Below, piece after piece: positions 1-60,875 of a stretch of DNA of 64,000 nucleotides. Source of the stretch: Macrostomum lignano (taxonomy: Eukaryota). The stretch lies in contig NIVC01001156.1 in NCBI GenBank assembly GCA_002269645.1, positions 124,001 to 188,000 on the forward strand, written 5' to 3'. The notes beneath the pieces are model-generated. The model was not told where the DNA came from. It did not search any database and worked only from the letters and a program-made list of their open reading frames with translations. Position 1 is the first letter of the stretch. Each line of letters opens with the position of its first letter. The translations under genes and the position numbers were made by a program.

Positions 1-76
1 TTTTATTATTATTATTCTTGGATACGAGGGAGAAGAGACAGGTAGAGAAAGACGCAGAAGCAGCGAGCGGCCTCAC

Positions 77-386
77 CCTCCAAACAGAAAATCTGCTGCC
101 GCTTCATCAGGCCGGCAAAGAACGCGGCCCCGCACTGGCAGTTGTCAGCTGAGCAGGTGACATTTTCTTGACGCCTCCGAGCTCTGGCAGCGGCGCCACC
201 GGCTGCTGGCCACCAGGACCGGCAGTTTGTCTGCGCCGCGCACGGCTCCGGGCAGAGCGCCGGGCCGGAGCAGTTCAGGCTGGGGCCGCCGCCGCAGCTG
301 CAGCAGCAGATGATGCTGGCGCAGATGATGCCGAAGCAGCACAGAGCCCGCGCCGCGGATGCACCGGTGGGACGGCCTGTCGGCAT
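77..386 (-). CDS. Probable first coding exon of a secreted or membrane Cys-rich protein that continues beyond the left edge
   Basis: ATG at 386; hydrophobic Cys-rich N-terminus (ALCCFGIICASIICCC); RARRR furin-like site followed by C-x3-C-x-C...C; GTGAGG donor immediately after 77 on the minus strand. No family recognised. Confidence 0.35.
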
Positions 387-765
387 TTCTTAGCCTTCGC
401 AGGGAATCGGCAAGATGCGCGGCTGGGGAGCGGAGCTGGCAGTTGAGTCGGGCACTCGCGGCCTGCCATCCTGCCTGCCTACCTGCCTATATGGCACTGG
501 GGGCGGCCGCCTGCCGCAGGATTTGTTGGCACGGGGCCAGCCAATCGGTGACTGCTTGGAATCTGGGAAACAGATTCGGGCATTTGATTTGGCTGCTGTT
601 GAGCTGGCTGGGGGGGTTAAGTTGAGGGCGTGGCATCCATGAGGCATACTGTTGTGCTTAGCGGCCTGTGGGGCCGAAATCAGAGGGTTAGTGCTTGTTC
701 ATTACCCGGGGAACTGCAGGGTTACTGAGGCCGACAGATATACGGAGGGGACCGAATGAATGAGG

Positions 766-1147
<382 letters not shown>

Positions 1148-1686
1148 TGCCCAGCATTAGCTTTCTACTCGCATGACTTTTGGCTCACATGAGCATTAAT
1201 GATTTTGATCCAGCGGTGGCTGCAGAGAGACACGGAGACAGCCCGGACTAAACGGGAACGCAGAGCCAACAAGGGCGAAGCCTCTCAAGCCGAAGCAGAC
1301 GCGATAGCTGCTTCCATTATTGCACTGAAATTAGAGGCCCTGGCTGAGGACAAAGCCGCCCATTGTTCCAACGAAAGTGGAAATGCAAACTGCGCGGTCT
1401 GATGAAGGGGCAGCGGGGAGAGAGCGGGTGGGAAGCCGAGAGAGGTGGCGGAGTAGCGGCAGTCCCGCAGTCTTCGCAAAAGGTAAAAAATAGATCCCAC
1501 TTCCGCAGTGGCTGAGGTGTGAGCTCAGCGTGAGTCGAGCCATGCACCTGATTAGTGCAGATGCGGATCCTAGAACTGATGAGAACTGTTTTTTGTGGGG
1601 AAGGAGGGAGAGGGATGTGCCTGGCAGGGCTTGTGAGCAAGGTGGGCCCAGACTGTCTGGCAAAACTGGTAGGAAAATCTCAGCGG

Positions 1687-2165
1687 GAAAACTTCGCCAT
1701 TGGAAACCGCCATGAGAAACCTTCGCCGTTGAAAACCTTCGCCGTTGAAAACCTTCGCCATGAGAAACCTTCGCCGTTGAAAACCTTCGCCATGAGAAAC
1801 CTTCGCCGTTGAAAACCTTCTCCGTTGAAAACCTTCGCCATGAGAAACCTTCGCCGTTGAAAACCCTCGCCGTGAGAAACCTTCGCCGTGAGAAACCTTC
1901 GCCGTGAGAAACCTTGCCGTGAGAAACCTTGCCGTGAGAAACCTTCCGTCGGAAACCTTCGCCGTGAGAAACCTTGCCGTGAGAAACCATCGCCGTGAGA
2001 AACCTTCGCCGTGAGAAACCTTGCCGTGAGAAACCTTCGCCGTGAGAAACCTTCGCCGTGAGAAACCTTGCCGTGAGAAACCTTCGCCGTGAGAAACCTT
2101 GCCGTGAGAAACCTTCCGTCGGAAACCTTCGCCGTTAGAAACCTTGCCGTGAGAAACCTTCGCCG
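1687..2165. repeat. Minisatellite with 15-17-bp units (GAGAAACCTTCGCCGT and GTTGAAAACCTTCGCC variants)
   Basis: Direct reading; about 30 units, with unit type changing along the array. Confidence 0.93.
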
Positions 2166-2668
2166 CGGTAAAACTCCTGTGGGGGAAATCTCGTGCTCCC
2201 GCATAAACTTAGAAAACTTCCGATATGTTTATTAAATACGAACTTTGTACTGTTCCAGGCAGAGCATCAGAAAAGATGAATGCTAATTTCGTACTGACAA
2301 AAACTCTTCTGTCGATCTAAGCGGAGCGTTGCCGCCCCACGTAAATATTTACATTGAGAACGGGGCGCTCTCAACAATTCCAAGTGCCGATCCATCAAAT
2401 TTTTTTGACTTGGTGAACCTTCCCGGCCGTGCCGGCAGCCTGCTGGGCACTTTTCAACTCCTCGATTTGTTTGGCCAAAAACCCGCTTTCAAAGATCAGG
2501 GGAGTTGCGTGTCCCGTTCAACTGCTGCATTCGCCATCGGCGTGACCACTTCGGCAGCCACTTCTTGATTTTTTCACGCATCTGCTTCCACCTTCGGCCC
2601 AGCCCCAAGTCTCGCTCTGCGTGCTGCATAAAATTTGATTTTTTAGTGCGATCGGCTCAGTACCGTGA

Positions 2669-3040
2669 CACTCACTCACTCACTCACTCACTCACTCACT
2701 CACTCACACACTCACTCACTCACTCACTCACTCACTCACTCACTCACTCACTCACACACTCACTCACTCACTCACTCACTCACTCACTCACTCACACACT
2801 CACACACTCACTCACTCACTCACACACTCACTCACTCACTCACACACTCACTCACTCACTCACTCACTCACTCACTCACTCACTCACTCACTCACTCACT
2901 CACTCACTCACTCACTCACTCACACACTCACACACTCACTCACTCACTCACACACTCACTCACTCACTCACACACTCACACACTCACTCACTCACTCACA
3001 CACTCACTCACTCACTCACTCACTCACTCACTCACTCACT
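2669..3040. repeat. (CACT)n microsatellite
   Basis: Direct reading. Confidence 0.98.
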
Positions 3041-3123
3041 TATTCTATTCTTTCCTCCATGTCCTCTACATGATGGCCAATTTTGATTTCAACGTCCGAT
3101 ATCTTCTATATCGACCTGACATA

Positions 3124-4405
<1,282 letters not shown>

Positions 4406-4799
4406 TGGCGTATGCGCACAAGATGAGGTAAACGGATGTAACTTATGCTTGCCTGATCGGCATAAGCATATCGATTTTTTTTTTGGATTTCATCTGTTGC
4501 AAAAAAGTGAATAAAGCTGAGGGCCGTCAATCAGCTAGTAAAGAAAATCAGAATTAGAGCACTCACTGAGAGGTTTGCCATACCTCATAATACATATATT
4601 TAACTGAACACCTCTCTCTCTGACGCAACAACCCCACCATGTTCAATGAGGGGCGGTGGACGCCAGGCGTACACTTAACGGCACTCCACAAAGAAGGTGC
4701 AGGCAGGCAGGAACACAACTAATCATAAAATCCCCCTACATGCAATGATGCTTCATCATTGCAGCACTTGAAAAACATTGATGTTCGGAAAAGAAACTC

Positions 4800-7560
4800 A
4801 CTATGACCCCCCAATAATAGTTAAACGAAACGAATCGCACAAACAACGAAACGCAGCTAAACTGCAACACAGATTGATAAATCATGCCAGCTAGCATGGA
4901 ATTCAAGCATCTCCTGGGTCCGCGGCCTGGCCTTTGCACGACTCGAGACCTTGACGATCTCACTGCTCAGTCTCGTCCCGGATACACCGCCTCCAAAATG
5001 CCAGTAAACCAGGTGAGCCTCGATGGCCAGCTTCGCCTTTCGCCAGGACGATGTCGCCGACCGTCGCCTCTCGGATCACGCCGAGCAGATTTTCGCACAG
5101 TTTGTCAGATATTGCCGCTCCCAACAGTTCCGGAAGGAGTGAAGTCTGACGCGCATTTGCATTAGCAGTTTTGGCAACGGTAGCAGAAGATCCGAGGCAG
5201 ACAGAAGAAGGTTGCGCCGTAAGCCGCTGTAACAACAGAAAGGGTGCTGGTGTCAGAATTTCTTCCTTGTGATCAGCATCCACGTAGAGCAAAGGGCGGC
5301 TGTTGAGCACCGCCTCCACCTCCATTTGTACTGTTCGTCCAATGTAGGACTTGCATTCAGAAGGGTCTTGCGCAGCTTGATTTCCTTAATCAATTGCTTC
5401 CAGAAGCCTCCTTGCCAGGGTGCGCACTCGATGATGGACTTCTACGTGATCGTTCATGTCAAGCAGAACTCCTGGACTTTTTGACTCTCCGATGCTTGCA
5501 AAATCCGCGCGGCTTTGGCAAATGTCTTAGAATTATCGCTGATAAGACTAGAGATGCCTCTCCTCGCACGAATCTCCATAGGACTCTCAGGCAGGTCTCG
5601 GTTGTTAAATCCTTCAACAGTTCCAGATGAAGCGCTCGCGTTGCTGCGCAGGTGAACACCAAGATCTAGCCCTTCTCGACGGCAGTATCTTCTCTCAGCT
5701 TGACCGGATCTCAGAAGTCAAGTCCGCTCCACTCGAACGCACTCGAACTGGTCAGCTCCTATGAGGATGTTGATCTCTGGATGCTGCTCGCTGCCGATGT
5801 CCCAGTCTGTCAGATCCAGATGTGGGAAGTGATCGCTGCGCAAGCTGTTGACAACGAGCTGATGAGAGCAGATGTATGGTACTGTGTAATGCGTAATGTG
5901 AAACGGTTGACTAGCTTACGAATTTGGAACTCGACCTCCGTTTATAGGACCTTAGGCTGTGTGCCTCCGAATTTCGTTACTTTCATTGTGTCTTAGCCGA
6001 TCACACTAAATTCCGCTCAGCTACGCCCGACATAATGAACGAACGGTTACTCACAGAGTCGAAGAGACTTCTAACCCCTATTTCACTGCTGCCACCTCGT
6101 GAAATCAGCATAGCTCCAGCAGTAGGACAAATCACTGTCTGGCCTTGGTAACCATCGCCATAGTCTTCACTTCGTGAATTTTGACACCCTGCGCGGCCGA
6201 CTGTTCGGGTTCTTCTTTCCTAAACCCACCGTATCGATGATGCATCAAGGAATCTTGTCTGCCGGCCGTTGCTGTAGCTGTTCCACTCGGGTAGAGCAGA
6301 CTGGGATGATGCTTCAACTTGTAGAAGCCACTCTACTTCTTTTGATAGCAAGTCGTGGGGGCTTGACCTTTGGTTTGAGGCAACTGAAGCAGTGTCTCTG
6401 TTCTTTTAAGAATCGAAACTTAGTGGACACATCCACCAGTAGATCCCAACTTTTTGGAGTATGTTCAGCATCACAGTAAGGACACATGTTTCTGACTTTG
6501 GCGACCTTCGTAGCCTTAGGCTGCACAGCAGATACCGCGGATTCCTTTGTTTTCCTGTGTTGAACTCTCGCTCCGAGAGCAGCTTCCTCCTCAAATAGGA
6601 TTTCTAGATCAAGGTCAAGGCATTGAGGAATTTTTTAATCAACACTAGGCCGCTTCAATTTGTCACCTGTTATTGACTGCTACCATGGGAAGAGCGTATG
6701 GAAACTATCCTGGCAGTTCTAAGCATCTCACTTCCGGCAAGTTCGTCAGCAAGTTGAACAGCAAGATGGTCTCGTATGAAGAAACATCACCCCGAGATTC
6801 TCCAGGCTGCAGACATTGCCACTGACTTGATCGTAGAAGTTTCTCAGGTGGTGGACCGAAGCACCTAAGCAGATCATCGTGGAGAACTTCGCCAGATTAT
6901 CGCGCACGGCTCCACTCCGGGATCCAAACCGTCGTTGCAGGTTATCGCAATCTTGTAGTTCCCGGCCGTGATGTTAAGGCCAGCGATCGAATTCTTGACT
7001 TCTCCTGAAAGGCACGATTGCAGGTAGCTGAACTTGTCAACAACGCTGAGGCTCGAGTTGTCGTGGTTGCTGGAACTGAAGCGGTCCCAGAATGGAGTCC
7101 ATTGAGTCCGATCTCCACTGAATGCTGGTGGCGCCAGTACGAGTATAGGCAGCCTGATGGCCAGCGTAGTCGCCAAAGCAGCACTCTCTCGCGGTGGCGT
7201 TGATGGCGTGGTCTCCTTCGATTCCTGTTGCTTCATTGCTTGCATGCGGCTTTCTCACTCCTGAAGAATCTGTAGTCGCTCGGCGAGACTTGAAATCATC
7301 TTTCCAGCCAGCAACTCGAACTCCATCGTCTTCTTCACATACTCTTGGAGTGCATTCTCGACGAGCTCAACGGACAGTTCTTCTTCCACTGCCAGCAGCT
7401 GTTGCTTCTTGAGGCACAGTGCTTTCAGTTTGCTTTCGATATCTTCCTCAGCAGCCTATGGCTCGAGCTGGTCTTGGCCTTTCTGGGCCAATCTGGTGAC
7501 ATTCGCTCACAATACTCCACGCTTTCTGGAGTCCATGCTAGGCTGACGAGAAACCGCTTT
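4800..7560 (-). mobile_element. Degenerate, internally deleted BEL/Pao LTR retrotransposon (Gag, protease, then integrase core; RT and RNase H absent)
   Basis: Gag ATG at 7536; DUF1759-like PPAFSGDRTQWTPFWDRF...LSVVDKFSYLQSCL; Cys knuckles CPYCDAEH and CFSCLKP; protease LFDSVSNRSFI and NILIGAD; integrase GLDF...LVFTCAATRALHLEL and EVEAVLNSRPL. Many stops and frameshifts; no LTR pair found; boundaries approximate. Confidence 0.88.
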
Positions 7561-7700
7561 GTCACTGTAGGACTCTATCGCTCTATACCTTCACTTTATT
7601 GTGATTTTAGTTCAGGCACTATCCATGACATCAACACTTACATGTCTAGGAAAGCATAAGATTATGATATATTTATAACTATCATTTAAAATTTATCCAG

Positions 7701-9085
7701 GCAATCAGCCAGCCCATTCGGACCGAGCTACCGGTGCGCGACCCGCGGCAGACTTTTGCACCGCATTTCCATGTTGCTGCTTTCCCGAGCCAGCTGATTT
7801 CCTAGGCAGACTGCCGCCAAATATTTGCGACGAGTTAAGCAAAGAAACCGAAATTCACCTGGTTGTCGCTACCCGGCCAGGACACAAAAATGAGTACAGG
7901 GCTAGTTACAGTTTTCTCGAGAAACGATTTATTCGCACGTTTAACGATACACAGGGACGGCTATTTGTCCTGCTTAAGTACCTTATTAAGAAAGTGATGG
8001 CAAAAAAGCTGGGAGTTGCAGGTCTAAAGTCCTATCACGCCAAGACGTTAACCTTCTTTATGATTGGTCGCGAGGACGAGTCCATCTGGTCTAGCGAAAA
8101 CTTGTTTCACTTGACAGAAAAATCCATGGATTTACTGGTGGAACTTCTCGATTCCATTGAACGCCCGGATGTACTGATGCCACACTTCTTTTTGAAGGAC
8201 GGGCCGTTGTTTATTAAAGGTGCGGACTCAGAGGGACACCGTAAGCAGCAGATTCGGCGAGCAGCTATCGAGATGAGGCAGAACTTACAGCTGCATCTGC
8301 AAAGTTATGTAAGATCCGTGCTAAAGCCACTGGATTCCGATAATTTCTACTTCCATCCTTTCTTGCTGTCGGAGATTGGTATAGAGACAGTCAAACCGGA
8401 CGACATTGCAAAGTACCACAGGCTGTACGACTACATTTATGTCACGCTAATGGAGCTGGTGGAACAGGACTTGCCGCTTGAGCAGTATCTGAGAGACATC
8501 GCTAGAATTCCGGATCACGCATACAGTGCTAGGGTTTGCCTGACAGCTTTGGCTTTGTGGAAGTTTGGGAAACACGACTCTGTAACGGAAGTTCTAAAAG
8601 ATTCACTGGAGCATCAAGCATCTCGCTTCGTGCCATTCACTGTCTGTTCAGATGCCCAAGAGGCCAAGTTATTGATCTGGCAGCATTTGCAAGAGACTGA
8701 TGCCGCGTGGCGCTTTGTTTTCGCAGCCAAGACTCTCCCAGTGTTCACCTTCCTGCCCGACAGACTGCGACGACTCTTTCCTGCCGAGATGCCCGACTTC
8801 AAGCTTTTTTTCTACATGAACTTCAATGCTCTGCTGAAATGCCTGAGCGCTGTTGCCCTGCCAAACCTATTTTCAGTTTCAGACTGGTTCTCTGAACTTC
8901 AGCTTGATCCTGACTTTGAGGAGCTGTACGCCTTTTGCGAGTTCTGCCGGGATCCGAAGGCACTGAGAGCAGCACACAGGAGGATGTGTCAAGTCGTTCG
9001 CAAGCCGATTCACCCTCTGGAGAAAGCGAAGTTAGAGCTGGTTGAGAAGCGATGCTCTGAGTTGCAAGCTAAACAACGCGAATGA
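7701..9085 (+). CDS. 3' exon of a Mab-21/cGAS-like receptor (cGLR) nucleotidyltransferase with a long helical C-terminal extension
   Basis: The frame is open from acceptor ATTTATCCAG|7701, well upstream of the tracked ORF at 7994. It reads ADFCTAFPC..FPEPADFLGR...IHLVVA...EYRASYSFLEKRF...QGRLFVLLKYL...LKSYHAKTL..W...MPHFFL, matching the Mab-21 motif series (DhVPA, WP..A..W..R, HLV, WRhSFS.hE, LLK, SYHhKT, PHYF). The N-terminal GS/DxD exon was not found. Confidence 0.8.
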
Positions 9086-10682
9086 AATTAAAATAATTGG
9101 ATTTGGTGAATTTAGTGGTTATTGCATTCAAGAGTAGTAAAATATTTTCGCTTTCAAATCAATCCATCATATCAAACATTAAGCTTTTGCCCCTCGTTAC
9201 CTTTAAGGAAGTCGAATTGTTTCAAATATAGCATTTTGCAAGCTAGTAAAGACTACGAGAAAGCAATTTAATGCAAGATAGCAAAAACGCATGCATTTTG
9301 AGCCTCACTGCTAGTTGTCAAGTATGGTAAAAAAGGTGTGTCAAACCGGCAGGCTACATTAAGATGCTTACGGCCCTCTGTTCAAAATTACCTTTTAATA
9401 TACCGCTTAAATTTGTATTACACTTACACTTAATCGTTCTAATTTAATAAGATTTTGTATCCACACCACCAAACTTGTGACCACGTGAGGATGAAACGCA
9501 CGGTTACACAACAGGAACAAAATTTAAAATTAAAACAGCGCATAAGTTAAAGTGCAGAGTTCGACGTGTGTTAGAGCGAATTTTCTGTTCCTAACAAGAG
9601 ACTTCAGTCAATTAATGTAATTGTTCGCGTGTGCTTTTGTTCCAAAATGCAGTTTGTTAATTTTTTGAAACACCCTTAAATTTAATGTTAACCTCAGACC
9701 TCTAAATAATATCTATGCGAACAAGAAAATAGATTATGAATGGATTTTTAGACATACAGCAATCTCGTATGCGTTATCGTTTGTAGTGCATCCACTGTCC
9801 ATGCAAATATTGGATGCACTAAAACTATAAAGTTTGATTTCGTGTATGCAATTTTTTTTGTTTTATTGATTGTGATTTCGAATTGAAGCGTAAATTCAAT
9901 TTTTACCTGCTTGTGAATGACTGATGAATATTTCGTAGCTTCTTCTAGTACTCTAGTTTTTTGGTTGGTTGAATCTGAAACGGTCCTAAGTGAGCTTTTT
10001 TAAAAAAAGTATGCTATATACTATACAATAATATATGTACATTAAAGTATCAATAGTACGCTACTGGCATGCTGCAAATATGTAAAATTAAAATGCGAGT
10101 AGCTTTGAAAGTTCAGAGCGTCATTATATTTGATTTTGCAATTGCTTAAACTGATTAATACGCCGAGCATTATGGGCCTGCATCAGTAATGCGCCCGCTC
10201 GAATTCGCTAAATACGATTGTATAAGCCCTAATCATTATCACATTGGAATTCTAGGACTTTATTCTCTCAGCTCATTTATTTATTGTGGCATTCAACTGA
10301 ACTAATTACCGGTACCCCCAAAATTCAATACACATTTTGGAAGCCATAGCTACAAAGCTAGTTTTCTTCTCAAGTCATGCGGCTTAAGCCTGGTTCACAT
10401 TTCCGCAAATAGCTGACGCTCACAGCTAATAGCTGATTTTCAGAAATCTACTAGCTCAGCGCGACCACTACTAGCGGGTGCTACTATCGGCCTCAAATAG
10501 ATGCATCGCCATGCAGTTCAATTTAACCCGCGAAGATAATAGGCAATATTTGACCCTTGGCCACTGTTACGAGTATATAAAGTAATTCAGTTTAGTGCTA
10601 GCCCTATCTGTGCTTCGTACAGGGCGTTTTCAATCTAAGAAATCTTGACCAGAAAGCCGTGACCAGCTTTCAGATTTCAAAC

Positions 10683-11969
10683 ATGCTTTCACGAGCCAAG
10701 AAGCTACTGCTACTGGCAATCGTAACGATACTGCAACATCGTAGGCTGATCAGGCAAGGCCGCCGCCCTAGGCGATGGTGGCGGAGACCGAGTCATCAAC
10801 GAAGAGAAGAGCTTGGCGAGTTTGCCGGATTGATCCCACATCTGCGAGATAGAGACTCGGAGATGTACTTCAAGTATATGCGCATGCGCCCGGCTCGGTT
10901 TGAGCATCTGCTTTCACTGGTTGCAACCAAACTCTCCAGGCCATGTGCAAGAAGAGAGGCCGTTCCGGCAGAGGAGAAGCTAATGATGACGCTTTGCTAC
11001 CTGGCTTCGGGTTGCAGCCAAGCCGACTTGTCGTTTCGATTTGGCCGAGGACGCTCTACTGTGTCAGGGGTCGTGTTCGAGACTGCGATTGCCATCTACG
11101 ACAAGCTGGCGTCAACATATCTAAAGTTTCCTGCATCTGCAGAAGAATGGAAAGCAATCGCTGGTGGATTCTGGGAAAAGTGGCATTTTCCGAACTGCCT
11201 CGGTGCAATTGACGGCAACCATTTCAAGGTTCATTTTCCAAGAAACACCGGCTCCCAGTACTTCAATTACAAGCAACAGTTCAGCTCACTGGTACTCGCC
11301 ATGTGGGACAGTAACTACATCTTCACGTACATAGAGAGTGGCAGCGCAGGGAGAGAAGGAGACGCTGGAGTCTTCTCACGTTCAGCCTTGTACGCTGGAT
11401 TGGAGTCTGGATCGGTGAAAGTCCCGGAGCCTTCCTGCATTTCTGGCAGCAGCCTCGTCATGCCATTTGCAATTGTCGGTGATGAGGCTTTCCCGCTGAA
11501 GAATTATCTCATGCGCCCATTCCCTGGGCGCGGCGGAATGGTACCATTGGACTACAAGACGCAAGTGTTCAACTACCGGCTGTCTCGAGCAAGACGCACA
11601 ATTGAGAATGCGTTTGGAATCCTGGTGACTCGCTGGCGACTCTTCCTGCGGCCTGTCATAGCGAGAATCGATCACGTTGAGGCCTTTATTCGGTGCGCAT
11701 TCGTACTGCATAACTTCATGCGAATAGAGGACGAGGCCAACATTACAGCAGCTCGGTCCTACATGCCACCTGGAAGTGTTGACCAGGAACTGCCCACCGG
11801 CCAGGTACAGGAGGGTTCATGGAGATCCACCGTGACAGACAGCGTCGGGGTAATGCCAGCCCGGAATCTGGGTGGAAATCGAAGCAGCGCCTCCGCTCGG
11901 GAGCAACAGATGCTGCTGAGGGACTTCTTCGTCAGCCCAATGGTGCCATTCCATGGCAGAGCGCAATGA
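10683..11969 (+). CDS. Harbinger DDE transposase (HARBI1/ALP1-like)
   Basis: Uninterrupted ORF from the first ATG at 10683; motifs WHFPNCLGAIDGNH, YFNYK, IVGDEAFPL, FNYRLSRARRTIENAFGIL, LHNF. Confidence 0.95.
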   Translation: MLSRAKKLLLLAIVTILQHRRLIRQGRRPRRWWRRPSHQRREELGEFAGLIPHLRDRDSEMYFKYMRMRPARFEHLLSLVATKLSRPCARREAVPAEEKLMMTLCYLASGCSQADLSFRFGRGRSTVSGVVFETAIAIYDKLASTYLKFPASAEEWKAIAGGFWEKWHFPNCLGAIDGNHFKVHFPRNTGSQYFNYKQQFSSLVLAMWDSNYIFTYIESGSAGREGDAGVFSRSALYAGLESGSVKVPEPSCISGSSLVMPFAIVGDEAFPLKNYLMRPFPGRGGMVPLDYKTQVFNYRLSRARRTIENAFGILVTRWRLFLRPVIARIDHVEAFIRCAFVLHNFMRIEDEANITAARSYMPPGSVDQELPTGQVQEGSWRSTVTDSVGVMPARNLGGNRSSASAREQQMLLRDFFVSPMVPFHGRAQ

Positions 11970-12327
11970 TACATGTACCTACTGATGATAATCGATAATA
12001 CTGTTGATGAATCATTAATTTATTCCGCATGTTTATTTCGCATACAGAACGTGAATTTATGAGCTAATTTTGTGGAAATTTCAAACAAGGCGGCGAGAAA
12101 GTACAATGCTGCAGCAGAAAGTAATCCAAACTCGTAAATAAATTGACAAGACTGTGGAGACAATATTTTCAACATATTCATTTATGATTTCATTATATTT
12201 TCTGTCTCTCTCGATCTCTGCACTTGCTCTCTGACACGCACAATGCAATCTGGTCATGAAAAAAGGAAAAAATATTTGCTTCTAGTTAGCAAAATATTGC
12301 ACTCTATCGCTTTTATCTCACGCACTT

Positions 12328-13155
12328 CTAGGAGTCATTGGGAGGTGTGACCGTGGATATGATGGAGCTGAGCATGTCGTCGAAGGAAACTGATCCAGCA
12401 GCGGCATCAGCGGCAGGCTCAGTTCGGATGGCAACGCTTCGGGGCAGGCCGTGGAGTTGGATTGTGAACAACTCGCTCCGCAGGTGCGCCATGGCATAGT
12501 CGCGCTCAATTTGCGTTGGAAGCCGACGGATGGCCTGTCCAATTGCTTGGCCAAAGGAGGCATATTCGTCCTCATCTTTTGTCAGTTGCTGGGTCAACTG
12601 GCTGAGGGCAGTATCCAGCTTTGATGCTTCTGTTGCAGTTGCCTTTCTGGCCTTCCTTGGCGCACTTTCCGCAAACTCTCGCATTGACGCCTCACTGGGG
12701 TCAGTTGTTGCAGCCTGTGCCTCTGCTCGACTGGACTGTTGCGCCTCATCATTGACCGAGATTGCCTGCTGAGAGGGTCCAGCAGATCCCACAGCTACAA
12801 GTTCTGGTGTGGGCGGAGGCACATTTGAGGTAGTATCGCCAATGTAGTCACACTTGTCCAGGAAGTTCATGCGACTGTATATTCCCAACCGCCTGGGAGT
12901 AGGCTTGACCGCACTCCCACTCGGAAGCTTGCTTCCACGCCGGAAAACAAAGTAGTCACGCTTGAGACCTTGAAACCGCTTGAGGCACCAAGTTGCATCC
13001 TTGCCCAAAGTCTCAGCGATCTGATTCCATGCGCTGGTTTTCGCCTGCTGATCCTTGAATTTTCGGCTTGAGATGTTGTAGACAACTTCATGTTTGGCAA
13101 CTTCATCTATCAGAGTTGCATCCAACTCCGGAGTCTCGTGTGACAAGTCGGACAT
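12328..13155 (-). CDS. Harbinger MADF/Myb-SANT DNA-binding partner protein
   Basis: Intact 275-aa ORF; LIDEVAKHEVVYN...KTSAWNQIAETLG...CLKRFQGLKRDY MADF pattern; C-terminal DEDEYASFGQAIG..IRRL; lies inside the TIRs. Confidence 0.92.
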   Translation of the reverse strand: MSDLSHETPELDATLIDEVAKHEVVYNISSRKFKDQQAKTSAWNQIAETLGKDATWCLKRFQGLKRDYFVFRRGSKLPSGSAVKPTPRRLGIYSRMNFLDKCDYIGDTTSNVPPPTPELVAVGSAGPSQQAISVNDEAQQSSRAEAQAATTDPSEASMREFAESAPRKARKATATEASKLDTALSQLTQQLTKDEDEYASFGQAIGQAIRRLPTQIERDYAMAHLRSELFTIQLHGLPRSVAIRTEPAADAAAGSVSFDDMLSSIISTVTPPNDS

Positions 13156-14419
13156 TTCCAGGTATCAAGTTGTGTGGAGTTTGGGGTGAAGAATAGAGCA
13201 TGGTTCTATTCGTTTCATATAGCCTCCAGCTGTGCTCCTGTCTGGTTGCGCAAGAAATTGTCTGTACTCATTGTACAGTGAGCAGTGAGCAATGACACAA
13301 TCGTTTAAATTTACTGTACGCCTACCCCTGCCATCCATGCTGCAGAAGCGGACAACTCAAAGCAAGGAGTTGTGAGTGTTTATGTGAATGGGGTGCATTT
13401 CGGTTTCGTTTGCCATGCATAAAATTGAAATTTATATTGTCCTTTCTAGTTCTAATGAATAGAACCAAATAAAATCACTATTAGAGTCCGCCAGGAGCGG
13501 CGGACTTTCGGATAGTAGAGCTGCGCACGGATAGTAGCGTTCGCAATCAGCTGGTAGCGGCGGCGAACAGCTATTAGTTTGAAGCACGGAGCTATTTGCG
13601 GAAATGTGAACCAGGCTTTAGCAGCTGTCATCATTGTTTTCTACCCCAAGAAATTTAATCGTCTTCTCTTGAATTTTTTCAAACAACCTCACATCGTCTT
13701 GCGTAGGTATACATAGTTAAGCAGTTTAACAAGAAACCGTTTACAGGTTATGGTGTGACACTATATATTTTGAATTTTTATGACCTTTTTTGGACAGTCT
13801 ACATCCATGTACATGATATTGCCTCTAAAATTTGCATTTATTAATATACTGTATACATCGGTATAATTTTTATAACGTTTATAGATGAGACATGAGTCAA
13901 AAAAACAAAATCCCATTTACATGAATATGTAGAATATGTACATATAGACATTGTGCATATGGCTTTTCAATGCGCGGTTGTACATTGACTCCAAGTATTT
14001 GATTGTCTATAACATTCGAGCTGTCTGACGCGCAGATTCATAACGTAATATCGGGCTTTTCAAACTGTGAGCTACATGTACATGTATGTACACTAATTTA
14101 TAAGTTCACCTGCTCTTCACGTGCCTATTCTCGCTACATAAATCTAATAAATCTGAGTTCATTGAGACTCAACACATTTACATGCATACACTTAATTGTA
14201 TAACTCGAAGAAAAAACATAACTTCCGAAGCTGTTTCGGTATACACGCTGTATGCCTGGGTTCGGTGGCCCTCATTTAAGCAATTTGTTTTTATAGTTTC
14301 AACATTTTTATTTAAGTACATGTATATATATATACATGTACGTGTAGCCCGCGTATACTGAACGCCTGGTTGCTGGCCGTAAATTAGCTGTAACCAAATA
14401 CTTTTTATTGGGTCGGAGG

Positions 14420-17400
14420 ACCACGCCTTTTAAGGCGCAATTTCACTGACACGCACCAAAGCATCAGAGGCGCCAGAACTATAGAAGCGCCCAGTGGGCT
14501 GTCTTACAGTACGTGTACTAGCTAGTACGTCCGTACATGCACCCTTTGCAACATTTCTACAATTGGTGCTGCCAAAGCTGCTGGTGCGGACCTCTGCTCG
14601 TGTGGAAGCTCTCACGGCCATGGAGGGATCCAAAGCAGGGGGGGGAGTGCTGGCCAAACAACCAAAGCGCACTTATGCGGCTATGGCCAAGAGGCAGCCG
14701 GCCCTGATCATCCAAGGCCGGGAGACGCCTCTTACGGCCGAACAGCTCAACCTTATCTGGCGCAGGTTGGACTCCCACCTGGTCAAGATGGCCTTGAGCG
14801 GTACCGCTATTCAAGTCCAAAAGACGAAATTCGAGGACCAAGCCCTTCATATCCAGCCCGCCGACAGCCAGTCTAGGCAACAGCTCCTCGAGCTGCTGAA
14901 AGCCTTCGGCTGGACATCATGCTCTCACCAGCTCTTTCCCACGTGCCGCACCGCAGCTAGGCCCACTGGACCACTCTCCGGGCGGACAGATCTTGGCTTC
15001 GACCATCATTACTAGAGAGAGGACGGCTCGCTCCGCAAAATCATTCTCTCCTTTCAAGTAAACGGGACCTGACAAGATTTATCCTGCCTTCCTTCATGAG
15101 GCAGTTAAAAATGGCCTCCTCTGCAACCTCTTCAAGGCCAGCATTACCCTCGGGTACGTGCCAAAAGCCTGGCAAGAGGCCACGGTAGTCTTCATACCCA
15201 AACCAGGGAAGGGAGACTATCACTCTGCCAAAGCTTACCGCCCTATCAGTCTGAGACGTCTTTCTTTTTCAAACTGATGAAACAGCTGGTGCTCTGGCGC
15301 CTCCTCGTAGAGCTGAGGAACTCCCCGCTCTCCCCTAATCAGCACGCCTTTCGTCCTGGACGTTCCATCGAAAGTGCGCTTCACGCCATTGTCGACAAGC
15401 TGGAGCGCGCCGTGCTTGGCAGTGGATACGCGCTGTCGCTTTTCCTCGACTTTGATGGTGTGTTCAATAATGTGCTCTTTGAAGCCTTTAAGCGGGCCCC
15501 GGAATCCCAGGGCACGCATGAGCACCTTACCCGCTGGATCATGTACATGGTCTCCCATCGTACTGCCACCTCGCACCTCCTTGGGAGACTCACGCTCCGT
15601 GGAAGTCCAGAAAGGCGGACCGCAAGGTGGAGTCCTCAGCCTGATTCTCTGGAATTTAGTCATAGACGAGCTGCTTTGCAGCCCGCATCCGGACCCTGTT
15701 CAGAAGGTCGGCTATGCGGACGATGTTACCGCCACTGTGGCTGGACCATCACCCGCGGTCCTCAGGGACCTCCTTCAAGCCTTCATCCACCGCGCACATA
15801 GCTGCAGTCTCAGGTTCTCTGAGTCTAAAACCGTGGCAATCATGTTCACCAGCCGCCGAAACTGGAGGATTGAACCGCTCTCCCTCAATGACAAACCCGT
15901 TGCCATGGAGAAACAAACCAGATGTCTGGGCGTCACCCTCGACCACAGGTTGAGCTGAACCCCGCACGTCCAAACCAAAGCCCGCAAAGCTCTCGCGACT
16001 CTCGCGCTGATCCGCAGAGCTTTCGGCGCTACCTGGGGCCTCACCCCCGCCGCCTCTGGTGGATTTACACTGCCATTGTTAGACCGGCCATCTCCTTCTC
16101 CGGCTTCATTTGGAACAGTGCCCTAGAGGTGAAAGGGGTTTTTGAGGTTCTAAATAGGGTGCAAGGCCGCACTTGTCGAGCTATCATGAGCGCGGCTCCC
16201 TCTACGCCCTTCGCTGGCATGAACTCCTTCTTGGACATTCCCCCCTCGACCTCTTTGTTAGAGGGGAGGCAATGAAAACCACCCGCCGTCTGCTTGACGC
16301 GGATATCCAGAAGCAGTTCACCTTCAGAAAGCGGAACCTCCGGCCGCATGGCGACCTCAGCCTGCGAGACCTGGAAGCAGCGAGAGGCCTACTGACCCTC
16401 TCGGACGGAATCCCGTCCACGCTCTGCGCATGCCCTCCGCTCAAATTCAAAACCAGCATTCCACCACGTCCATTCCAGAAAGAGACAACTGGAAACCCCA
16501 TGAAATCCACTGCTTCATTGACGGGTCCCAAATCAACTCCTCCTCTGGCTACGGCTACGGCATCGTGTCTGGAGGGAGAACTGTGGCGACCTTCTCTCAA
16601 CACACCGGCACCTGCTTCACCGTCTTCCAGAACGAAGTTCTCGCCATTAGCTCCTGCACCATGGAGCTGTACAATCAACGCATCTGGGGGAAGGAGATTA
16701 CCCTCCACTCGGACAGTCAAGCGGCGATTCACGCCCTTGAGCGCACCACCACCTGCTCGCGTACAGTCCTCGACTGCATCGGGCAGCTCAACCGCTTAGG
16801 CGCCTCTAACAAGGTGTCCCTAAGGTGGATCCCTGGGCATTCGGGCCACCCCGGCAACGAGTTTTGGCCGATTGCCTGGCCAACTCCCTGGCTTCTAAGC
16901 ACAGGGAGAGGTGGGCTAACGCCCCGACTGCCGGCAATCCCGCGCGGCTGTCCCCTGTCCTTCCTCCGCCCTGCGCAGGGCCCTGCTTGGACTCAACCGC
17001 AGGGACCTCACGGTGACCATGGCCCTCTCGGGTCATGGCTGTTTTGCCAGGCATCGTCACCTCCAGGGAAAAAATCGCAGTGAGGAATGCCCATTCTCCC
17101 TCTCCAGTGTCGAGAATGCGGAGCACTTTATCTGTGAATGCCCCGCCTTTACTCAGGACAGGCTCACCTACCTCGGCCCAAACCCGGACCTCTCCGACGT
17201 TTTCAGGCCCGAGAATCTCTGCCAGCTCTTCCGCTACCTAAGGGCTACAGGCGAGCGACAATCCACCTCCTGGACTCTCCGGAGGGGGACCGAGCTGTGG
17301 ACACCGGCACCACCGGAACTCCCTGCATGACACCGCAGCACTATAGCTGCCCGTGGTCTCCAGGGGTTAGCGAAATGCGCGGCAACGCCTCCTCGCTGTT

Positions 17401-17445
17401 TCCGGACGCACGGAGCCCGGTTGCAGCTAAGTCAAGCTAAGTCAA
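14420..17445 (+). mobile_element. Non-LTR retrotransposon (LOA/R1-like, with RNase H); degenerate, endonuclease region deleted
   Basis: ORF1 N-terminus (RTYAAMAK...LIWRRLDSHL, DUF4780-like) at ~14617-14905. RT at ~15005-15960: GPDKIYP, VVFIPKPGK, YRPISL, LFLDFDGVFNNV, PQGGVLS, GYADDV. RNase H at ~16490-16870: FIDGS, VFQNEVLAI, SDSQAA, WIPGHSGHPGNE. C-terminal CCHC ([11 protein letters not shown]). 3' tail GCTAAGTCAA x2 at 17426-17445. Many frameshifts; 5' boundary approximate. Confidence 0.9.
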
Positions 17446-17687
17446 CATTTCTAAAATTGCCGACATATTCGAAGTGCTCGATGGCAAATGGCAAATAAAA
17501 ATAATTGCAAATTTTTTTTGTATCTCAGCATGGCTTTTAACAATAGGTCGAATTACTGAGCCATTTTTCCGCGGCCGTCAAACACTCAAGATAACGGATT
17601 TCTTTGCCGCACTGAAACGATCGAAGTGACATATGTGACAATACACACAAAATTTAGGAACACTGGCTAAACTCCCTTTAGTGCTAG

Positions 17688-17881
17688 CAGTAGCGCAGCC
17701 AGGGAGGGAGGAGCCGGGGAGCCTGCCCCTCGCAATTATTTACCCCCCTCCCCCAAAAAAATTCCGGAGAAAAATTACTCCTCTTCCTGAATTAGTTCCA
17801 GAGAAAAATCCCCGCCCCCTATAACCCCTCCTCCGGTTGCTGAATGGGCCCTCCCGAAATAATTTCCTGGCTGCGCCACTG
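17688..17881. mobile_element. hAT-type MITE (194 bp)
   Basis: 16-bp TIRs CAGTAGCGCAGCCAGG / CCTGGCTGCGCCACTG (1 mismatch); 8-bp TSD AGTGCTAG / AGCGCTAG (7 of 8 match). Confidence 0.8.
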
Positions 17882-19971
17882 AGCGCTAGCGTATCGCGAC
17901 CGCATGCCTCGATCAGCTCGATCGATCTGACTTTATTGGTCACTTGTCTTTCACCCAGGCGGGAGCTTCCCGGATCCGGACGTCCAACAGGTGGCCCCAG
18001 ATGCGACTAATGGACACCATGAGGCGAATTTTATGTTGGCTGAACAAACTTCAACAAAGAACAAACCTCAACTATTAGAAGTTCTCAGCTATTAACTCTC
18101 TCGACGTCGGGGTGATGACGGTGTGACGGGGGACTTGTGGAAAACTTCATTGTTTTACTATCATTTTTACTATCAGTAGACTACTACGTAAGTGTATCAT
18201 ATTTTGTATGAATTCTGTGTACGAGTACATTCATTGAATCGGCTTTTATATGTCAGCAAGTGATGAATTTTTAACAAATCAATAATTTGCCCAGCGCCCA
18301 TCGTAACTCTCAGCCAATTACAATTCGCTGTATCATCTGTCGTTTTACATTAACTGTTCGTTTTTCGTCGCTACTCACAAACAAATAAAAAAAACTTGGC
18401 CAACTAAGCAAGCAAAATATATCAGTTCAATTGAATATTGGACTGCGCTATACTTTCATTTTTCTTCGGTCTTGTTCGGTCTTGTTCTGCCAAGGACTGC
18501 CAGATTAAATTCGTCACAACGGAATGCTTGAAATTAATATCCAAAATTTAACGTCCATACGCTGTACCCTGTACGTACCTTAAACTCTAGTTCTAGTAGC
18601 AAAAACAAATATATATTTTGCATAGTGGTTCTTGTTCTAGAATCAGAATCAAGAATATGTTAACTACTGTTTGTAGAATTCAGAGTAGATCCCATGAACC
18701 GTACTAAAATTTTGAAATGTCTACATTTAAACAAAAATTAAGGCTAATTTTAGCATGGTGACTTCATATATGTTATATTTGTACAAACGCTAAAAAGTAT
18801 CATTATGATTTATAGTTTGAATAGATTTTAATTTTTAGTTGAGCTCTCTCACCCCTCGAAAAAACTGTTTATTCCCTTTTAAATCTTATTCGCATGAGTC
18901 AGCTGTTGAACAAGGCTGTTTGATCCATGGGCTGTGGCGGCGAAGCGTTTCTTTGATTGAGAAGGGTTAGTGGTAGTTTCCCCAGCGAATTTTAGATTTA
19001 GAGCAAAACTTATGCTAAAATCACTCAAAAAGCATATAATTATATTTATTTGTATTTATGATGACAAGTTATATTTATTTTGGTATGCACTAGGACACTG
19101 GACAGTTTTAGCTGCTTAACTAGTACTTAGTAATTGTAGTTTTTACATATTATATATTAATAATAATATTAATCATGGTAAATATAAGAATACTTTTTGA
19201 AAGGCTAAATCATCCATTTTTCATTTAATAATATAACTTTTACTTTACTTATAACATAGCATAGACCTAGATATACATATTATGGTGTTGTATACATTAG
19301 ATAGTAATTATTATTTCTAGACTATAGTATACTTACACTTTGTAGTGTATTGTGTAAAATTTCTATGACAGTATTTAATGTTTTTACTTTTTATCCAGTA
19401 TAAAAGTGAACTATATAAATGAATTCAGGTGAATTTGCTCCTAAATATATGAGCTAACAAGATAAATTTGTTTTTATCATAGTAAAATAGTTCATTTAGT
19501 GTTATATAGAATACAATTATATTTTATTTGTTTAAACTATGTAATGAAAGATAATTTTTGTCAAATATAAAATTTCTGTGTAATAGCAATTATGCTTTTT
19601 AGAATATTTTTGTTAATTTATTGATAGAGTTGAGCACCCTAAATATGCTTGACATATTTTAATTTATGTTTAGAGCCAATCATGATTAAGAGCTAAGCAA
19701 GTAGTATAATACTATATATAATATATATAGAAACTATAAAACATGAACTTGTTGAATTTAGGATATTCAAGATTAATAAATGCTATATACAAAATATACT
19801 ACAAACTATAGCAGTATAAGTACTATTTTGAAGCATTTTATTCAAATATAGATGTTATTGGTGTCTGTAGTATATTTTTCCCATCCTTTTAAACTCAAAA
19901 AATAGTTGATAAGCTCTCAGAATATATAACTACAAAACTCATTCATTTAAGCATCTAGAGGACAGCTAAAA

Positions 19972-36904: not shown

Positions 36905-37498
36905 ATGTGGCCGAGCAGGCGCGGCCGCTCCGACAGCAGCGGCGCCGGCGCCACCAACGGCGCCAGCAGCATTTTCGGCGCCCCGCTGGATGTCGCCATC
37001 AGGCGCCGGGGCAGCAGCCAGCAGCAGCAGCCGGCGGAAGTTCCGGACATTGTCCGGCAGATCTGCGAGCACCTGAGCAAGGCCGGCCTGGCAACCGAGG
37101 GCCTGTTCCGCGTCAACGGCAACAACCGGATGGCTAACCAGATTCGCCGCCTGTTCGACGAGCACTCTGTGGTGGACTTCTCCGACATTCACGACGTGCA
37201 CTCGATCGCCAGCGTGCTGAAGCAGTACATCCGCGAGCTGCCGGACGGCATCGTGGACAGCGAGGCCACGCTGCAGTTCGTGCAGGCTGCCGAGGCCGCG
37301 GCCGGCGACCCCAACCGGCTGTGCCGGGATTACGCCGAACTGATCGACCGGCTGCCGGAGCCCAACAGGAAGCTGCTGAAGTACCTGACCGAGTTTCTGC
37401 GCCGAGTTGCCGACAGGGACGCCGAGAATAAAATGTCGCCCCTTAATCTGGGCATCTGCTTTGGGCCCAATGTGTTCCGCTGCGGCGACACCGTGCAG
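36905..37498 (+). CDS. FAM13: FAM13-family RhoGAP, exon 1 (RhoGAP domain). Full model: join(36905-37498, 42059-42964, 45468-46166, 46286-46339, 47138-47580, 48016-48299, 50783-50898)
   Basis: IFGAPL...VPDIVRQICEHL...TEGLFRVNG...ASVLKQYIRELP...NKMSPLNLGICFGPNVF; catalytic Arg present; GTGAGG donor. An acceptor at 36881 suggests an upstream exon. Confidence 0.92.
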
Positions 37499-60790: not shown

Positions 60791-60875
60791 CTTCCTTCAC
60801 CGACCAATGACTTATGACCTATGACCAATCTGTGACCGAAACAAAAAGTCAACAAGCCAATCGAGGCCAGCTCAC

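What the first reader, a model, noticed from the sequence alone, without database searches (positions are those of the whole stretch)
7701..9085. cGAS-like receptor (Mab-21) exon with a ~290-aa unknown helical tail, lacking its catalytic 5' exon
Seen: the exon begins 293 nt upstream of the tracked ORF and carries the second half of the Mab-21/cGAS fold, including the third-Asp strand (DFCTAF), HLV, the EYRASYSFLE loop, SYHAKT and PHFF, followed by a long helical extension. Established: animal cGLRs are nucleic-acid sensors that make cyclic dinucleotides, with the GS and DxD catalytic motifs in the N-terminal half. I found no such exon between 400 and 7700, which is filled by microsatellites and the BEL relic. 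The gene is either spliced across a long repeat-filled intron or decapitated by the BEL insertion, yet the 461-codon frame is intact, which suggests selection.
Basis: partly seen in the sequence, partly recalled or inferred. Interest (0 to 1): 0.7.

Follow-up and report, generated by a model that had tools for sequence, protein, structure and literature searches.

The report
Beheaded flatworm cGAS-like receptor gene copy
This is the last exon of a Macrostomum lignano cGAS-like immune-sensor gene whose promoter and first three exons were removed by a ~2.9-kb deletion, so it is most likely a young gene relic and not a new kind of gene.

Summary
Window 7701-9085 (+) follows an AG acceptor and is open for 460 codons plus a stop. 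It carries the third-Asp strand, the Mab-21 C-lobe (Pfam PF20266, above the curated cut-off) and a ~250-290-aa tail.

The window is Macrostomum lignano DNA. It is colinear at ~97-98% identity with a sister locus, L001 (NIVC01000876.1). There the same exon is exon 4 of gene BOX15_Mlig030220g1, which encodes ankyrin repeats, a GS...DVD catalytic N-lobe, this exon's C-lobe and the tail.

The BEL/Pao relic lies inside intron 3 in both copies, so it did not behead the gene. The window instead lacks ~2,945 bp of the sister locus. That stretch holds the upstream region, exons 1-3 and the exon-3 splice donor. No N-lobe exon of any family member occurs anywhere in the 64 kb.

The intact frame is weak evidence for selection. 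The two copies differ at only 9 of 1,385 exon bases, 6 non-synonymous and 2 synonymous codon changes (dN/dS ~0.87). Synonymous sites are also less diverged than the introns.

The tail is conserved across a large M. lignano-specific ANK-cGLR-tail family. Li et al. 2023 already catalogued and cloned members of it. The tail has no significant fold match.

Verdict: a recently decapitated paralog or allele of a known family. Interest is low to moderate.

The parts
7701..9085 (+). Terminal coding exon (exon 4 of the sister gene Mlig030220): cGLR third-Asp strand, Mab-21 C-lobe, family-specific tail and TGA stop at 9083-9085
   Evidence: Open frame. 98.7% aa identity to P0001 residues 204-664. Colinear with L001 exon 14765-16149.
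7699..7700 (+). AG splice acceptor, the same position as the intron-3 acceptor of the sister gene
   Evidence: 'TATCCAG|GCAATCAGCC' is found at window 7700/7701 and at L001 14764/14765. The sister CDS can only be rebuilt with GT-AG introns using this acceptor.
7751..7768 (+). DFCTAF: beta-strand carrying the third catalytic acidic residue (D17 of the exon frame, D221 of P0001)
   Evidence: The column is D in 20 of 21 family members. It lies in strand E219-229 of the AF2 model. Its spacing from DVD is 56 aa, which fits the Li et al. motif.
7964..8218 (+). Mab-21_C (HhH/H2TH-like) helical domain, containing the SYHAKT and MPHFF motifs
   Evidence: PF20266 at E=4e-6, above the gathering cut-off. 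It aligns to the cGAS 'SYHVKT ... HYF' region.
8225..9082 (+). 286-aa family-specific C-terminal domain ('tail'): mostly helical with a few short strands, no recognisable fold relative
   Evidence: AF2 pLDDT 82.5, pTM 0.78. Foldseek best E is 0.15 against PDB and 0.32 against BFVD. It is conserved across M. lignano paralogs. No Pfam family is shared by the members.
4475..4484 (.). Deletion junction, inside a T10 run. Left flank = L001 to ~8106-8109. Right flank = L001 from ~11052. About 2,945 bp of the sister locus are absent (upstream region, exons 1-3, exon-3 GT donor).
   Evidence: blastn-short and direct reading of both loci. Exon 3 of L001 ends at 11036, with the donor GT at 11037-11038.
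4485..7698 (+). Remnant of intron 3, present in both copies
   Evidence: 97% identical to L001 11052-14764.
4960..7245 (-). Degenerate BEL/Pao retroelement relic, antisense to the gene and inside intron 3 in both copies
   Evidence: DUF1759 (Pao gag) E=7e-17 at 6877-7245(-). The same sequence is in L001.
3121..4406 (.). (ATAG)n microsatellite of 322 units. It sits where L001 has two shorter ATAG/AGAT arrays separated by 1.9 kb of unique DNA that the window lacks.
   Evidence: TRF results.
7997..7999 (+). First in-frame ATG (M99). A protein made from this copy alone would be 362 aa and would lack the third-Asp strand.
   Evidence: the ORF listing finds no ATG, GTG or TTG in frame between the stop at about 7676-7678 and 7994.
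9087..9092 (+). ATTAAA, a candidate poly(A) signal 2 nt after the stop
   Evidence: Pattern search; function not shown.

Best explanation
Window 7701-9085 is the orphaned last exon of a second genomic copy of the Macrostomum lignano gene BOX15_Mlig030220. The second copy is either a homeolog from the recent whole-genome duplication or a divergent haplotype.

The intact copy encodes ankyrin repeats, a cGAS-like nucleotidyltransferase and a family-specific ~250-290-aa C-terminal domain. The transferase has its GS loop and DVD in exon 3 and its third Asp in exon 4.

In the window copy a ~2.9-kb deletion, joined at a short T-run microhomology, removed the upstream region, exons 1-3 and the exon-3 splice donor. 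What remains has no start codon before M99, no promoter that can be recognised, and no catalytic GS/DxD half. It cannot make a cyclic-nucleotide synthase and is most likely a young, not yet degraded pseudogene.

Shown:
- homology and colinearity with the sister locus
- the missing segment and its junction
- the fold of the sister protein
- conservation of the catalytic residues in the family

Inferred:
- that the difference is a deletion in this lineage (not an insertion in the other)
- that the copy is silent
- that the family's intact members act as ligand-activated nucleotide-second-messenger synthases
For: - The only close homolog is P0001 (M. lignano, 664 aa, 99% identical), which has 203 extra N-terminal residues.
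- The window is colinear with L001 at 94-98% identity over more than 17 kb, except for defined gaps.
- L001's GT-AG exons are 10001-10188, 10518-10595, 10693-11036 and 14765-16149. Window 4395-4469 matches L001 8024-8098 and window 4475+ matches L001 11052+, so exons 1-3 and the donor are absent.
- No N-lobe of any of 198 family-related proteins is found anywhere in the window.
- The BEL relic is shared by both copies inside intron 3.
- P0001 has G140-S141, then 20 aa, then D162-V-D164, then 56 aa, then D221. This fits the published cGLR motif.
- These residues are invariant in the family: GS 20/20, DxD 19/19, third D 20/21.
- The AF2 model of P0001 (pLDDT 78.7) matches MAB21L1, cGAS, MB21D2 and Cv-cGLR1 at Foldseek probability 1.0 over ~380 columns.
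- dN/dS is ~0.87, and there are only 9 substitutions in the exon.
- If one assumes the exon's own low divergence and neutral change since then, the chance of the frame staying open is ~0.4. This uses 4.4% of substitutions creating a stop and the indel:substitution ratio of the flanks.
- No gene call for the 362-aa ORF is on record, and no second member sits in P0001's 90% cluster.
- M. lignano is a recent hidden polyploid with excess paralogs (PMC10468722).
Against: - The exon is much less diverged from its sister (0.65%, no indels) than the DNA on both sides (2.2-2.6%, 15 indel events). The drop coincides with the exon borders.
- If the window copy had drifted neutrally for the whole time since the flanks split, about 21-24 differences would be expected against 9 observed (P ~0.0005-0.002). 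So either the deletion is young, or the exon was homogenised by gene conversion, or it is still constrained.
- No transcript data could be consulted, so silence is inferred, not shown.
- M. lignano trans-splices ~30% of its genes (PMC8629364).
- N-terminally short 'tail-first' gene models of the family are annotated (P0088). Expression of a truncated product is therefore not absurd.
- The deletion cannot be checked against reads here.
Confidence: 0.68

Rival explanations
1. The truncated copy is still expressed and maintained. Transcription would come from a cryptic promoter, read-through or SL trans-splicing into or near the 7701 acceptor. The product would be a protein without a catalytic core, starting at M99: half of the C-lobe plus the tail. 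It could act as a regulator, decoy or adaptor for the intact ANK-cGLR-tail paralogs through the shared tail.
For: - The exon shows a sharp trough of divergence bounded by its borders, with no indels.
- The acceptor, the stop and an ATTAAA are intact.
- Annotated family models begin at the MPxFF motif and contain only the tail plus an extension. These are P0088 and P0191, at two loci.
- SL trans-splicing is common in this species.
Against: - dN/dS is ~0.87, and synonymous sites are as depleted of changes as non-synonymous ones. That is not the signature of protein-level purifying selection.
- The SL ends in ATG. Joined to 7701 it reads a frame that stops after 34 codons.
- The first in-frame start is 296 nt into the exon.
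- The upstream 3.2 kb is an antisense retroelement relic and microsatellite.
- No gene call or protein for this copy is in the databases searched.
- Low divergence is also seen over a retroelement relic 5-10 kb downstream, so low divergence alone does not prove function.
Confidence: 0.12
2. Assembly artefact. The real locus has exons 1-3, and the contig was mis-joined or collapsed next to the 1.3-kb (ATAG)n array and the T-run, so nothing was deleted in the animal.
For: - The missing segments lie right next to long microsatellites. The window's single ATAG array replaces two arrays plus 1.9 kb in L001.
- The junction lies in a homopolymer.
- M. lignano assemblies are known to be difficult, because of polyploidy and redundant contigs.
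Against: - The second breakpoint is in unique sequence on both sides. There are 75 bp of unique match on the left and a continuous match for more than 3 kb on the right.
- The copy differs from L001 by ~2.4% substitutions and by a 3.2-kb Harbinger insertion with a clean TSD. It is therefore a genuinely different haplotype or paralog and not a mis-assembled duplicate of L001.
Confidence: 0.1
3. The exon is used as a 3' exon by another upstream gene lying beyond the start of the window, giving a new chimeric transcript.
For: The acceptor is intact and the phase-1 frame is open.
Against: In the sister locus the next upstream gene is on the opposite strand (L001 1-2440, minus strand). The window starts inside it, at L001 2055. 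No donor-bearing coding exon is recognisable in 1-7700.
Confidence: 0.04

Closest known systems
BOX15_Mlig030220g1 (P0001; GCA_002269645.1, contig NIVC01000876.1), Macrostomum lignano
   Same: 99% identical over all 460 codons. Same acceptor, same intron-3 content including the BEL relic, same 3' flank.
   Different: The window copy lacks the ~2.9-kb segment with the upstream region, exons 1-3 (ANK repeats, GS loop, DVD) and the splice donor. It has 6 amino-acid differences and a Harbinger insertion 1.3 kb downstream.
M. lignano predicted cGLRs catalogued and cloned by Li et al. 2023 (PMC9980059, screen entries 89-93: PAA86972.1, PAA45980.1, PAA57558.1, PAA93208.1, PAA68676.1)
   Same: The same family. 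They share the 'GS(F/Y)(A/S)EGWGN...SD(I/V)D' N-lobe, the 'RPA.D' third-Asp strand, 'LRVS.SF.E', 'YHAKT', 'M.HFF' and the same tail beginning '(F)HPF'.
   Different: Only ~30-38% identical to this exon. They are full-length where this copy is truncated. None is named among the active enzymes in the text or tables held.
Vertebrate cGAS, human MB21D2, MAB21L1 and oyster Cv-cGLR1 (solved structures 5vds, 7lt1, 5eom, 8gjw/8gjy)
   Same: The sister protein's model superposes on the bilobed Mab-21/cGAS fold (probability 1.0, TM to target 0.45-0.60). Sequence signatures in this exon align to cGAS 'RLSFS..E', 'SYHVKT' and 'HYF'.
   Different: 12-17% identity. The N-lobe insert is shorter (56 aa between DxD and the third D). 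There are ANK repeats in front and a ~250-290-aa extra domain behind. There is no Zn-thumb-like element and no basic N-terminus that I could recognise (not tested). PF03281 does not detect the N-lobe.
Bivalve cGLR-like proteins with long helical C-terminal extensions (e.g. Sinanodonta woodiana KAL3855470.1, P0078)
   Same: Mab-21 domain followed by a long, mostly helical tail. Detected at E~5e-10 through the Mab-21 part.
   Different: The tails are not detectably homologous (BLASTP E>=0.14).

Membership tests
Animal cGAS-like receptor (cGLR), criteria of Li et al. 2023 (PMC9980059) | G[S/G] activation loop followed after 8-20 aa by [DE]h[DE]h | tested here: not met
   Absent from the exon and from the whole 64-kb window. 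Present in the sister copy as G140-S141, 20 aa, D162-V-D164.
Animal cGAS-like receptor (cGLR), criteria of Li et al. 2023 (PMC9980059) | Third acidic residue h[DE]h, 50-90 aa after the DxD | tested here: met
   D at exon codon 17 (7751-7753) in 'AADFC'. It is 56 aa after DVD in P0001, and the column is D in 20/21 paralogs.
Animal cGAS-like receptor (cGLR), criteria of Li et al. 2023 (PMC9980059) | Homology across the C-terminal helix bundle | tested here: met
   PF20266 above the gathering score. Alignments to cGAS and cGLR1 chains.
Animal cGAS-like receptor (cGLR), criteria of Li et al. 2023 (PMC9980059) | Predicted structural homology of the whole domain to cGAS/CD-NTases | tested here: inconclusive
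   Met for the intact sister protein. The window copy encodes only about the C-terminal 60% of the domain, so it cannot form the caged bilobed fold on its own. That fragment was not modelled as such.
Animal cGAS-like receptor (cGLR), criteria of Li et al. 2023 (PMC9980059) | Ligand-dependent synthesis of a cyclic (oligo)nucleotide | not testable with these tools
   Biochemical. Five M. lignano relatives were in the published screen, but none is reported as active in the text or tables held.
Mab-21 domain (Pfam PF03281 + PF20266) | Hit to the N-terminal NTase model PF03281 | tested here: not met
   No hit for the exon (E<=1) or for full-length P0001 (E<=10). The model appears too distant from this family, so this says little.
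   No TPR family in Pfam for any of 10 members. The best Foldseek hits are TPR proteins, but only at E 0.15-1 and TM<0.4. The model contains beta-strands between the helices.
Unprocessed (truncated) pseudogene | Loss of promoter, start codon or essential exons relative to a functional paralog | tested here: met
   About 2,945 bp with the upstream region, exons 1-3 and the donor are missing.
Unprocessed (truncated) pseudogene | Relaxed constraint or disabling mutations in the remaining coding sequence | tested here: inconclusive
   No stop or frameshift in 460 codons. dN/dS is 0.87, but from only 8 changed codons. The exon is far less diverged than its flanks.
Unprocessed (truncated) pseudogene | No transcript | not testable with these tools
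   No expression data were available. No protein or gene call for this copy is in the collections searched.

The most novel reading that the evidence does not exclude
The beheaded copy is not dead. It would be transcribed from a cryptic start and translated from M99 into a 362-aa 'C-lobe-remnant plus tail' protein. Through the family-specific tail, a confidently folded domain with no known structural relative, that protein would bind to or compete with the intact ANK-cGLR-tail enzymes. This would be a newly born, catalytically empty regulator of a flatworm-specific cGLR network, comparable to the annotated tail-first models P0088 and P0191.
Probability: 0.1. Interest if true: 0.55.

Novelty: new member of a known kind. 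Interest (0 to 1): 0.27.

Why it matters
For this locus the result is mainly a clean-up. An apparently mysterious 'catalytic-exon-less cGLR' is a recently truncated duplicate in a recently duplicated genome. The retroelement blamed for the truncation is an innocent intron resident.

The family behind it is more interesting. M. lignano is a flatworm, a phylum said mostly to lack immune cGLRs. It nevertheless holds dozens of ANK-cGLR paralogs with strictly conserved catalytic residues. All of them carry the same extra C-terminal domain of unknown fold, and some are fused to a caspase domain.

Working out what that tail binds, and which receptor reads the product, would extend cGLR biology to a genetically tractable, regenerating animal. 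Young truncated copies like this one show how fast the family turns over.

Tried and rejected
1. BEL insertion as the cause of decapitation: rejected. The relic is in intron 3 of the intact sister copy too.
2. A hidden N-lobe exon in the window: rejected. tblastn with P0001 at E<=10 and with 198 family-related proteins at E<=1e-3 finds only 7701-9085. The few other hits are retroelement pieces inside chimeric gene models.
3. SL trans-splicing supplying the AUG: rejected. The SL ends in ATG (PMC8629364), but ATG joined to 7701 reads a frame that stops after 34 codons.
4. The tail as TPR: not supported.
5. The tail shared with bivalve cGLR-like proteins: not supported.
6. Viral relatives of the tail: none found.
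7. A profile search with a tail-only alignment returned nothing, not even the known family members. I treat that result as uninterpretable, not as evidence of absence.
8. Exact-product look-up of the 362-aa ORF: nothing on record.
9. Literature searches for Mlig030220, for Macrostomum with Mab-21, and for Macrostomum with cGAS and STING: nothing relevant beyond Li et al. 2023.
10. PDB search with full-length P0001 was swamped by ankyrin-repeat hits. The ANK-free alignment A1 was used instead.
11. STING in M. lignano was not searched, because no query sequence was at hand.
Full report
**What is in the sequence**

- Window 7703-9085 (+) is an uninterrupted frame of 460 codons ending in TGA.
- It is preceded by TATCCAG|G with the AG at 7699-7700, so an exon would start at 7701 in phase 1. 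This explains why a naive translation from 7701 is full of stops.
- Pfam finds Mab-21_C (PF20266) at residues 88-172 with E=4e-6, above the curated cut-off.
- The nearest solved structures by sequence are a cGAS-like receptor 1 (8gjy) and cGAS chains.

**Where it comes from**

- The only close database relative is a 664-aa protein of the flatworm Macrostomum lignano, BOX15_Mlig030220g1 (P0001). It is 99% identical over the whole exon and has 203 further residues at its N-terminus.
- Its locus, L001 (contig NIVC01000876.1), is colinear with the window at 94-98% nucleotide identity from window base 1 to about 22,200. The exceptions are a few well-defined gaps.
- The window is thus a second M. 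lignano copy of the same locus.
- M. lignano is a recent hidden polyploid with many duplicated genes (PMC10468722). A homeolog or a divergent haplotype are both plausible, and I cannot tell which.

**Anatomy of the intact sister gene**

- The P0001 coding sequence can be rebuilt from L001 only with four exons and canonical GT-AG introns: 10001-10188, 10518-10595, 10693-11036 and 14765-16149.
- Exons 1-3 encode two to three ankyrin repeats, a linker/spine helix and the N-lobe. The N-lobe has G140-S141, then 20 residues, then D162-V-D164.
- Exon 4 is the window's exon. It starts 16 residues before D221 in 'AADFCTAF', which lies 56 residues after the DVD.
- These spacings fit the motif used to define animal cGLRs: G[S/G], X8-20, [DE]h[DE], X50-90, [DE] (PMC9980059).
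- An AlphaFold2 model of P0001, built on 22 family sequences, has mean pLDDT 78.7 and pTM 0.75.
- In that model the GS sits at a strand-helix turn, and the DVD and DFC lie on beta-strands.
- Foldseek places the model on MAB21L1, human cGAS, MB21D2 and oyster Cv-cGLR1, at probability 1.0 and E about 1e-6 over about 380 columns.
- The sister gene is therefore a bona fide cGLR-fold protein with a complete predicted active site.

**What happened to the window copy**

Window 4475-7584 matches L001 11052-14478, and the gag-like DUF1759 lies at 6877-7245(-). The relic is an old intron resident and did not behead the gene.
- The window instead lacks two blocks of the sister locus.
  - Block 1 is L001 5613-7556. 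It lies between two ATAG/AGAT arrays that appear in the window as one 1.3-kb array.
  - Block 2 is L001 ~8107-11051, about 2,945 bp.
- Window 4395-4469 matches L001 8024-8098, and window 4475 onward matches L001 11052 onward.
- Read base by base, the junction lies in a T10 run (window 4475-4484) with about 3 nt of T microhomology. The right breakpoint is 16 bp past the last base of exon 3.
- Block 2 contains about 1.9 kb of upstream DNA, all of exons 1-3, the two small introns and the exon-3 GT donor.
- A search with 198 family-related proteins finds no N-lobe exon anywhere else in the 64 kb, on either strand.
- Dozens of paralogs share the architecture ANK + N-lobe + C-lobe + tail (see below). 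The simplest polarity is therefore a deletion in the window lineage. This polarity is an inference.

**Does the open frame indicate selection?**

- The two exon copies differ at 9 of 1,385 bases (0.65%) with no indels. Six codon changes are non-synonymous and two synonymous, giving Nei-Gojobori dN/dS of about 0.87.
- The intron on the left and the 3' flank on the right differ by 2.2-2.6% and by 15 indel events. The divergence trough coincides with the exon.
- If the window exon had drifted freely ever since the flanks diverged, about 21-24 differences would be expected (P about 0.0005-0.002). The chance of keeping the frame open would be only a few percent.
- However, synonymous sites are as depleted as the rest (pS 0.65% against 2.4% in the introns). 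The non-synonymous:synonymous ratio is what neutrality predicts.
- A retroelement relic 5-10 kb downstream (RVT_1 and RNase H ORFs at 15277-17080) shows equally low divergence of 0.2-1.2%.
- The pattern is best read as a recent common ancestry of the exon sequences: a young deletion, and/or gene conversion or recombination between the copies. What followed was too short to degrade the frame.
- Given the exon's own divergence, the probability of no stop and no indel on the window branch is about 0.4.
- Ongoing constraint is not excluded, but it is not what the substitution pattern shows.

**Coding potential of the relic**

- There is no ATG, GTG or TTG in frame between the upstream stop (about 7676-7678) and 7994/7997. 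A protein made from this copy alone would start at M99.
- Such a protein would lack the third-Asp strand and contain only part of the C-lobe plus the tail.
- M. lignano trans-splices about 30% of its genes to a leader that ends in ATG (PMC8629364). That ATG joined to 7701 is out of frame and terminates after 34 codons.
- No gene call or protein for this copy exists in the collections searched.

**The tail and the family**

- An exhaustive phmmer scan found 234 representatives at E<=1e-3 and 42 at E<1e-30.
- Every strong hit whose source could be read is from M. lignano.
- These hits align over the whole exon, tail included.
- The common architecture is a variable, often very long ankyrin array, then 'VGS(Y/F)SEGWGN...SDID', 'RPA.D', 'LRVS.SFLE', 'YHAKT' and 'M.HFF', then the tail with invariant 'FHPF', 'Y', 'AW(K/R)F', 'FLP' and 'NF.AL'.
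- The catalytic residues are invariant among 22 aligned members that are only about 30% identical overall: GS 20/20, DxD 19/19, third D 20/21. This argues that the intact members are enzymes.
- Modelled on its own, the tail (window 8225-9082) folds confidently (pLDDT 82.5, pTM 0.78) into a mainly helical domain with a few short strands.
- The tail has no significant match in the PDB (best E 0.15, weak TPR-like hits, TM<0.4) or among viral models. No Pfam family is shared across members. It shows no detectable similarity to the tails of bivalve cGLR-like proteins.
- The family is not new. Li et al. 2023 list M. lignano proteins of exactly this type among their predicted cGLRs and cloned five of them, tails included, for their biochemical screen (PMC9980059, supplementary file 3, entries 89-93).
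- That paper also notes ANK- and TPR-fused cGLRs, and that most flatworms lack immune cGLRs.
- No Macrostomum enzyme is named as active in the text or tables held.

**How it most likely works**

- For the intact paralogs, by analogy with characterised cGLRs (inference): the ANK array and/or the tail sense a ligand or partner, the bilobed NTase closes, and a cyclic di- or oligonucleotide is made for a downstream receptor that remains to be identified in this species.
- For the window copy: it does nothing enzymatic. It is a beheaded duplicate, probably silent. I put this at about 0.68.
- Expressed truncated regulator: about 0.12.
- Assembly artefact at the microsatellite or homopolymer junction: about 0.10.
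- Capture by another gene: about 0.04.

**Verdict**

- It is a cGLR exon without its catalytic half. The cause is a 2.9-kb deletion, not the BEL element. The intact frame reflects youth more than demonstrable selection.
- It is a new, unannotated and truncated member of a known, lineage-specific cGLR family.
- Interest in the locus itself is low. The uncharacterised tail domain and the caspase-fused relatives are the parts worth following.

Noticed in passing
window 10389-13615: Full-length PIF/Harbinger DNA transposon. It has perfect 28-bp terminal inverted repeats (AGCCTGGTTCACATTTCCGCAAATAGCT) and a TTA target-site duplication. It carries an intact 436-aa DDE_Tnp_4 transposase ORF (10659-11969, +) and a 275-aa MADF/Myb-like ORF (12328-13155, -). 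The sister locus L001 has the empty site (…GCGGCTTA|GCAGCTG… at ~17500), so the insertion is younger than the split of the two copies and the element may still be active.
   Followed up: partly
proteins P0016 (PAA59752.1) and P0059 (PAA93319.1), M. lignano; not in the window: Some members of the same family are fused, after the cGLR-like domain and tail, to further ankyrin repeats and a C-terminal caspase domain (Peptidase_C14, E~1e-25 to 1e-27). This puts a cGLR-like sensor and a caspase in one polypeptide. I did not check whether the gene models are correct.
   Followed up: partly
proteins P0088 / P0191 (Mlig015042g1, Mlig005902g1); not in the window: Two annotated 532-aa M. lignano gene models start exactly at the 'MPSFFL' motif. 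They consist of the family tail plus a further helical extension, with no NTase part. They are either natural tail-only proteins or truncated models.
   Followed up: no
window 1-4406 versus L001 2055-8035: A chain of long tetranucleotide microsatellites and a minisatellite: (GACA)95, a 16-mer x29, (CACT)93 and (ATAG)322. Array lengths differ strongly between the two copies. L001 has 1.9 kb of unique DNA (5613-7556) between two ATAG/AGAT arrays, which the window lacks. Whether this is an insertion or a deletion was not determined.
   Followed up: partly
window 14000-19500: Divergence from the sister locus is only 0.2-1.2% over ~5 kb that includes non-LTR/LTR retroelement ORF relics (RVT_1 at 15277-15798, RNase H at 16430-17080). 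Elsewhere it is 2-5%. Divergence between the two copies is strongly mosaic, which suggests gene conversion or recombination between them.
   Followed up: no
window 36905-38053 (+), 60849-61499 (-), 23036-23548 (-): Other coding pieces in the window: a RhoGAP-domain exon (E=6e-41), a rhodopsin-type GPCR fragment (7tm_1, below the cut-off) and a DDE_3 (Tc1/mariner-like) transposase fragment.
   Followed up: no
window 52700-54750: Many long overlapping ORFs on both strands (up to 672 aa) in a region of extreme GC skew (-0.4 to -0.7) with no Pfam match. This is most likely low-complexity or satellite-like sequence and not genes.
   Followed up: no
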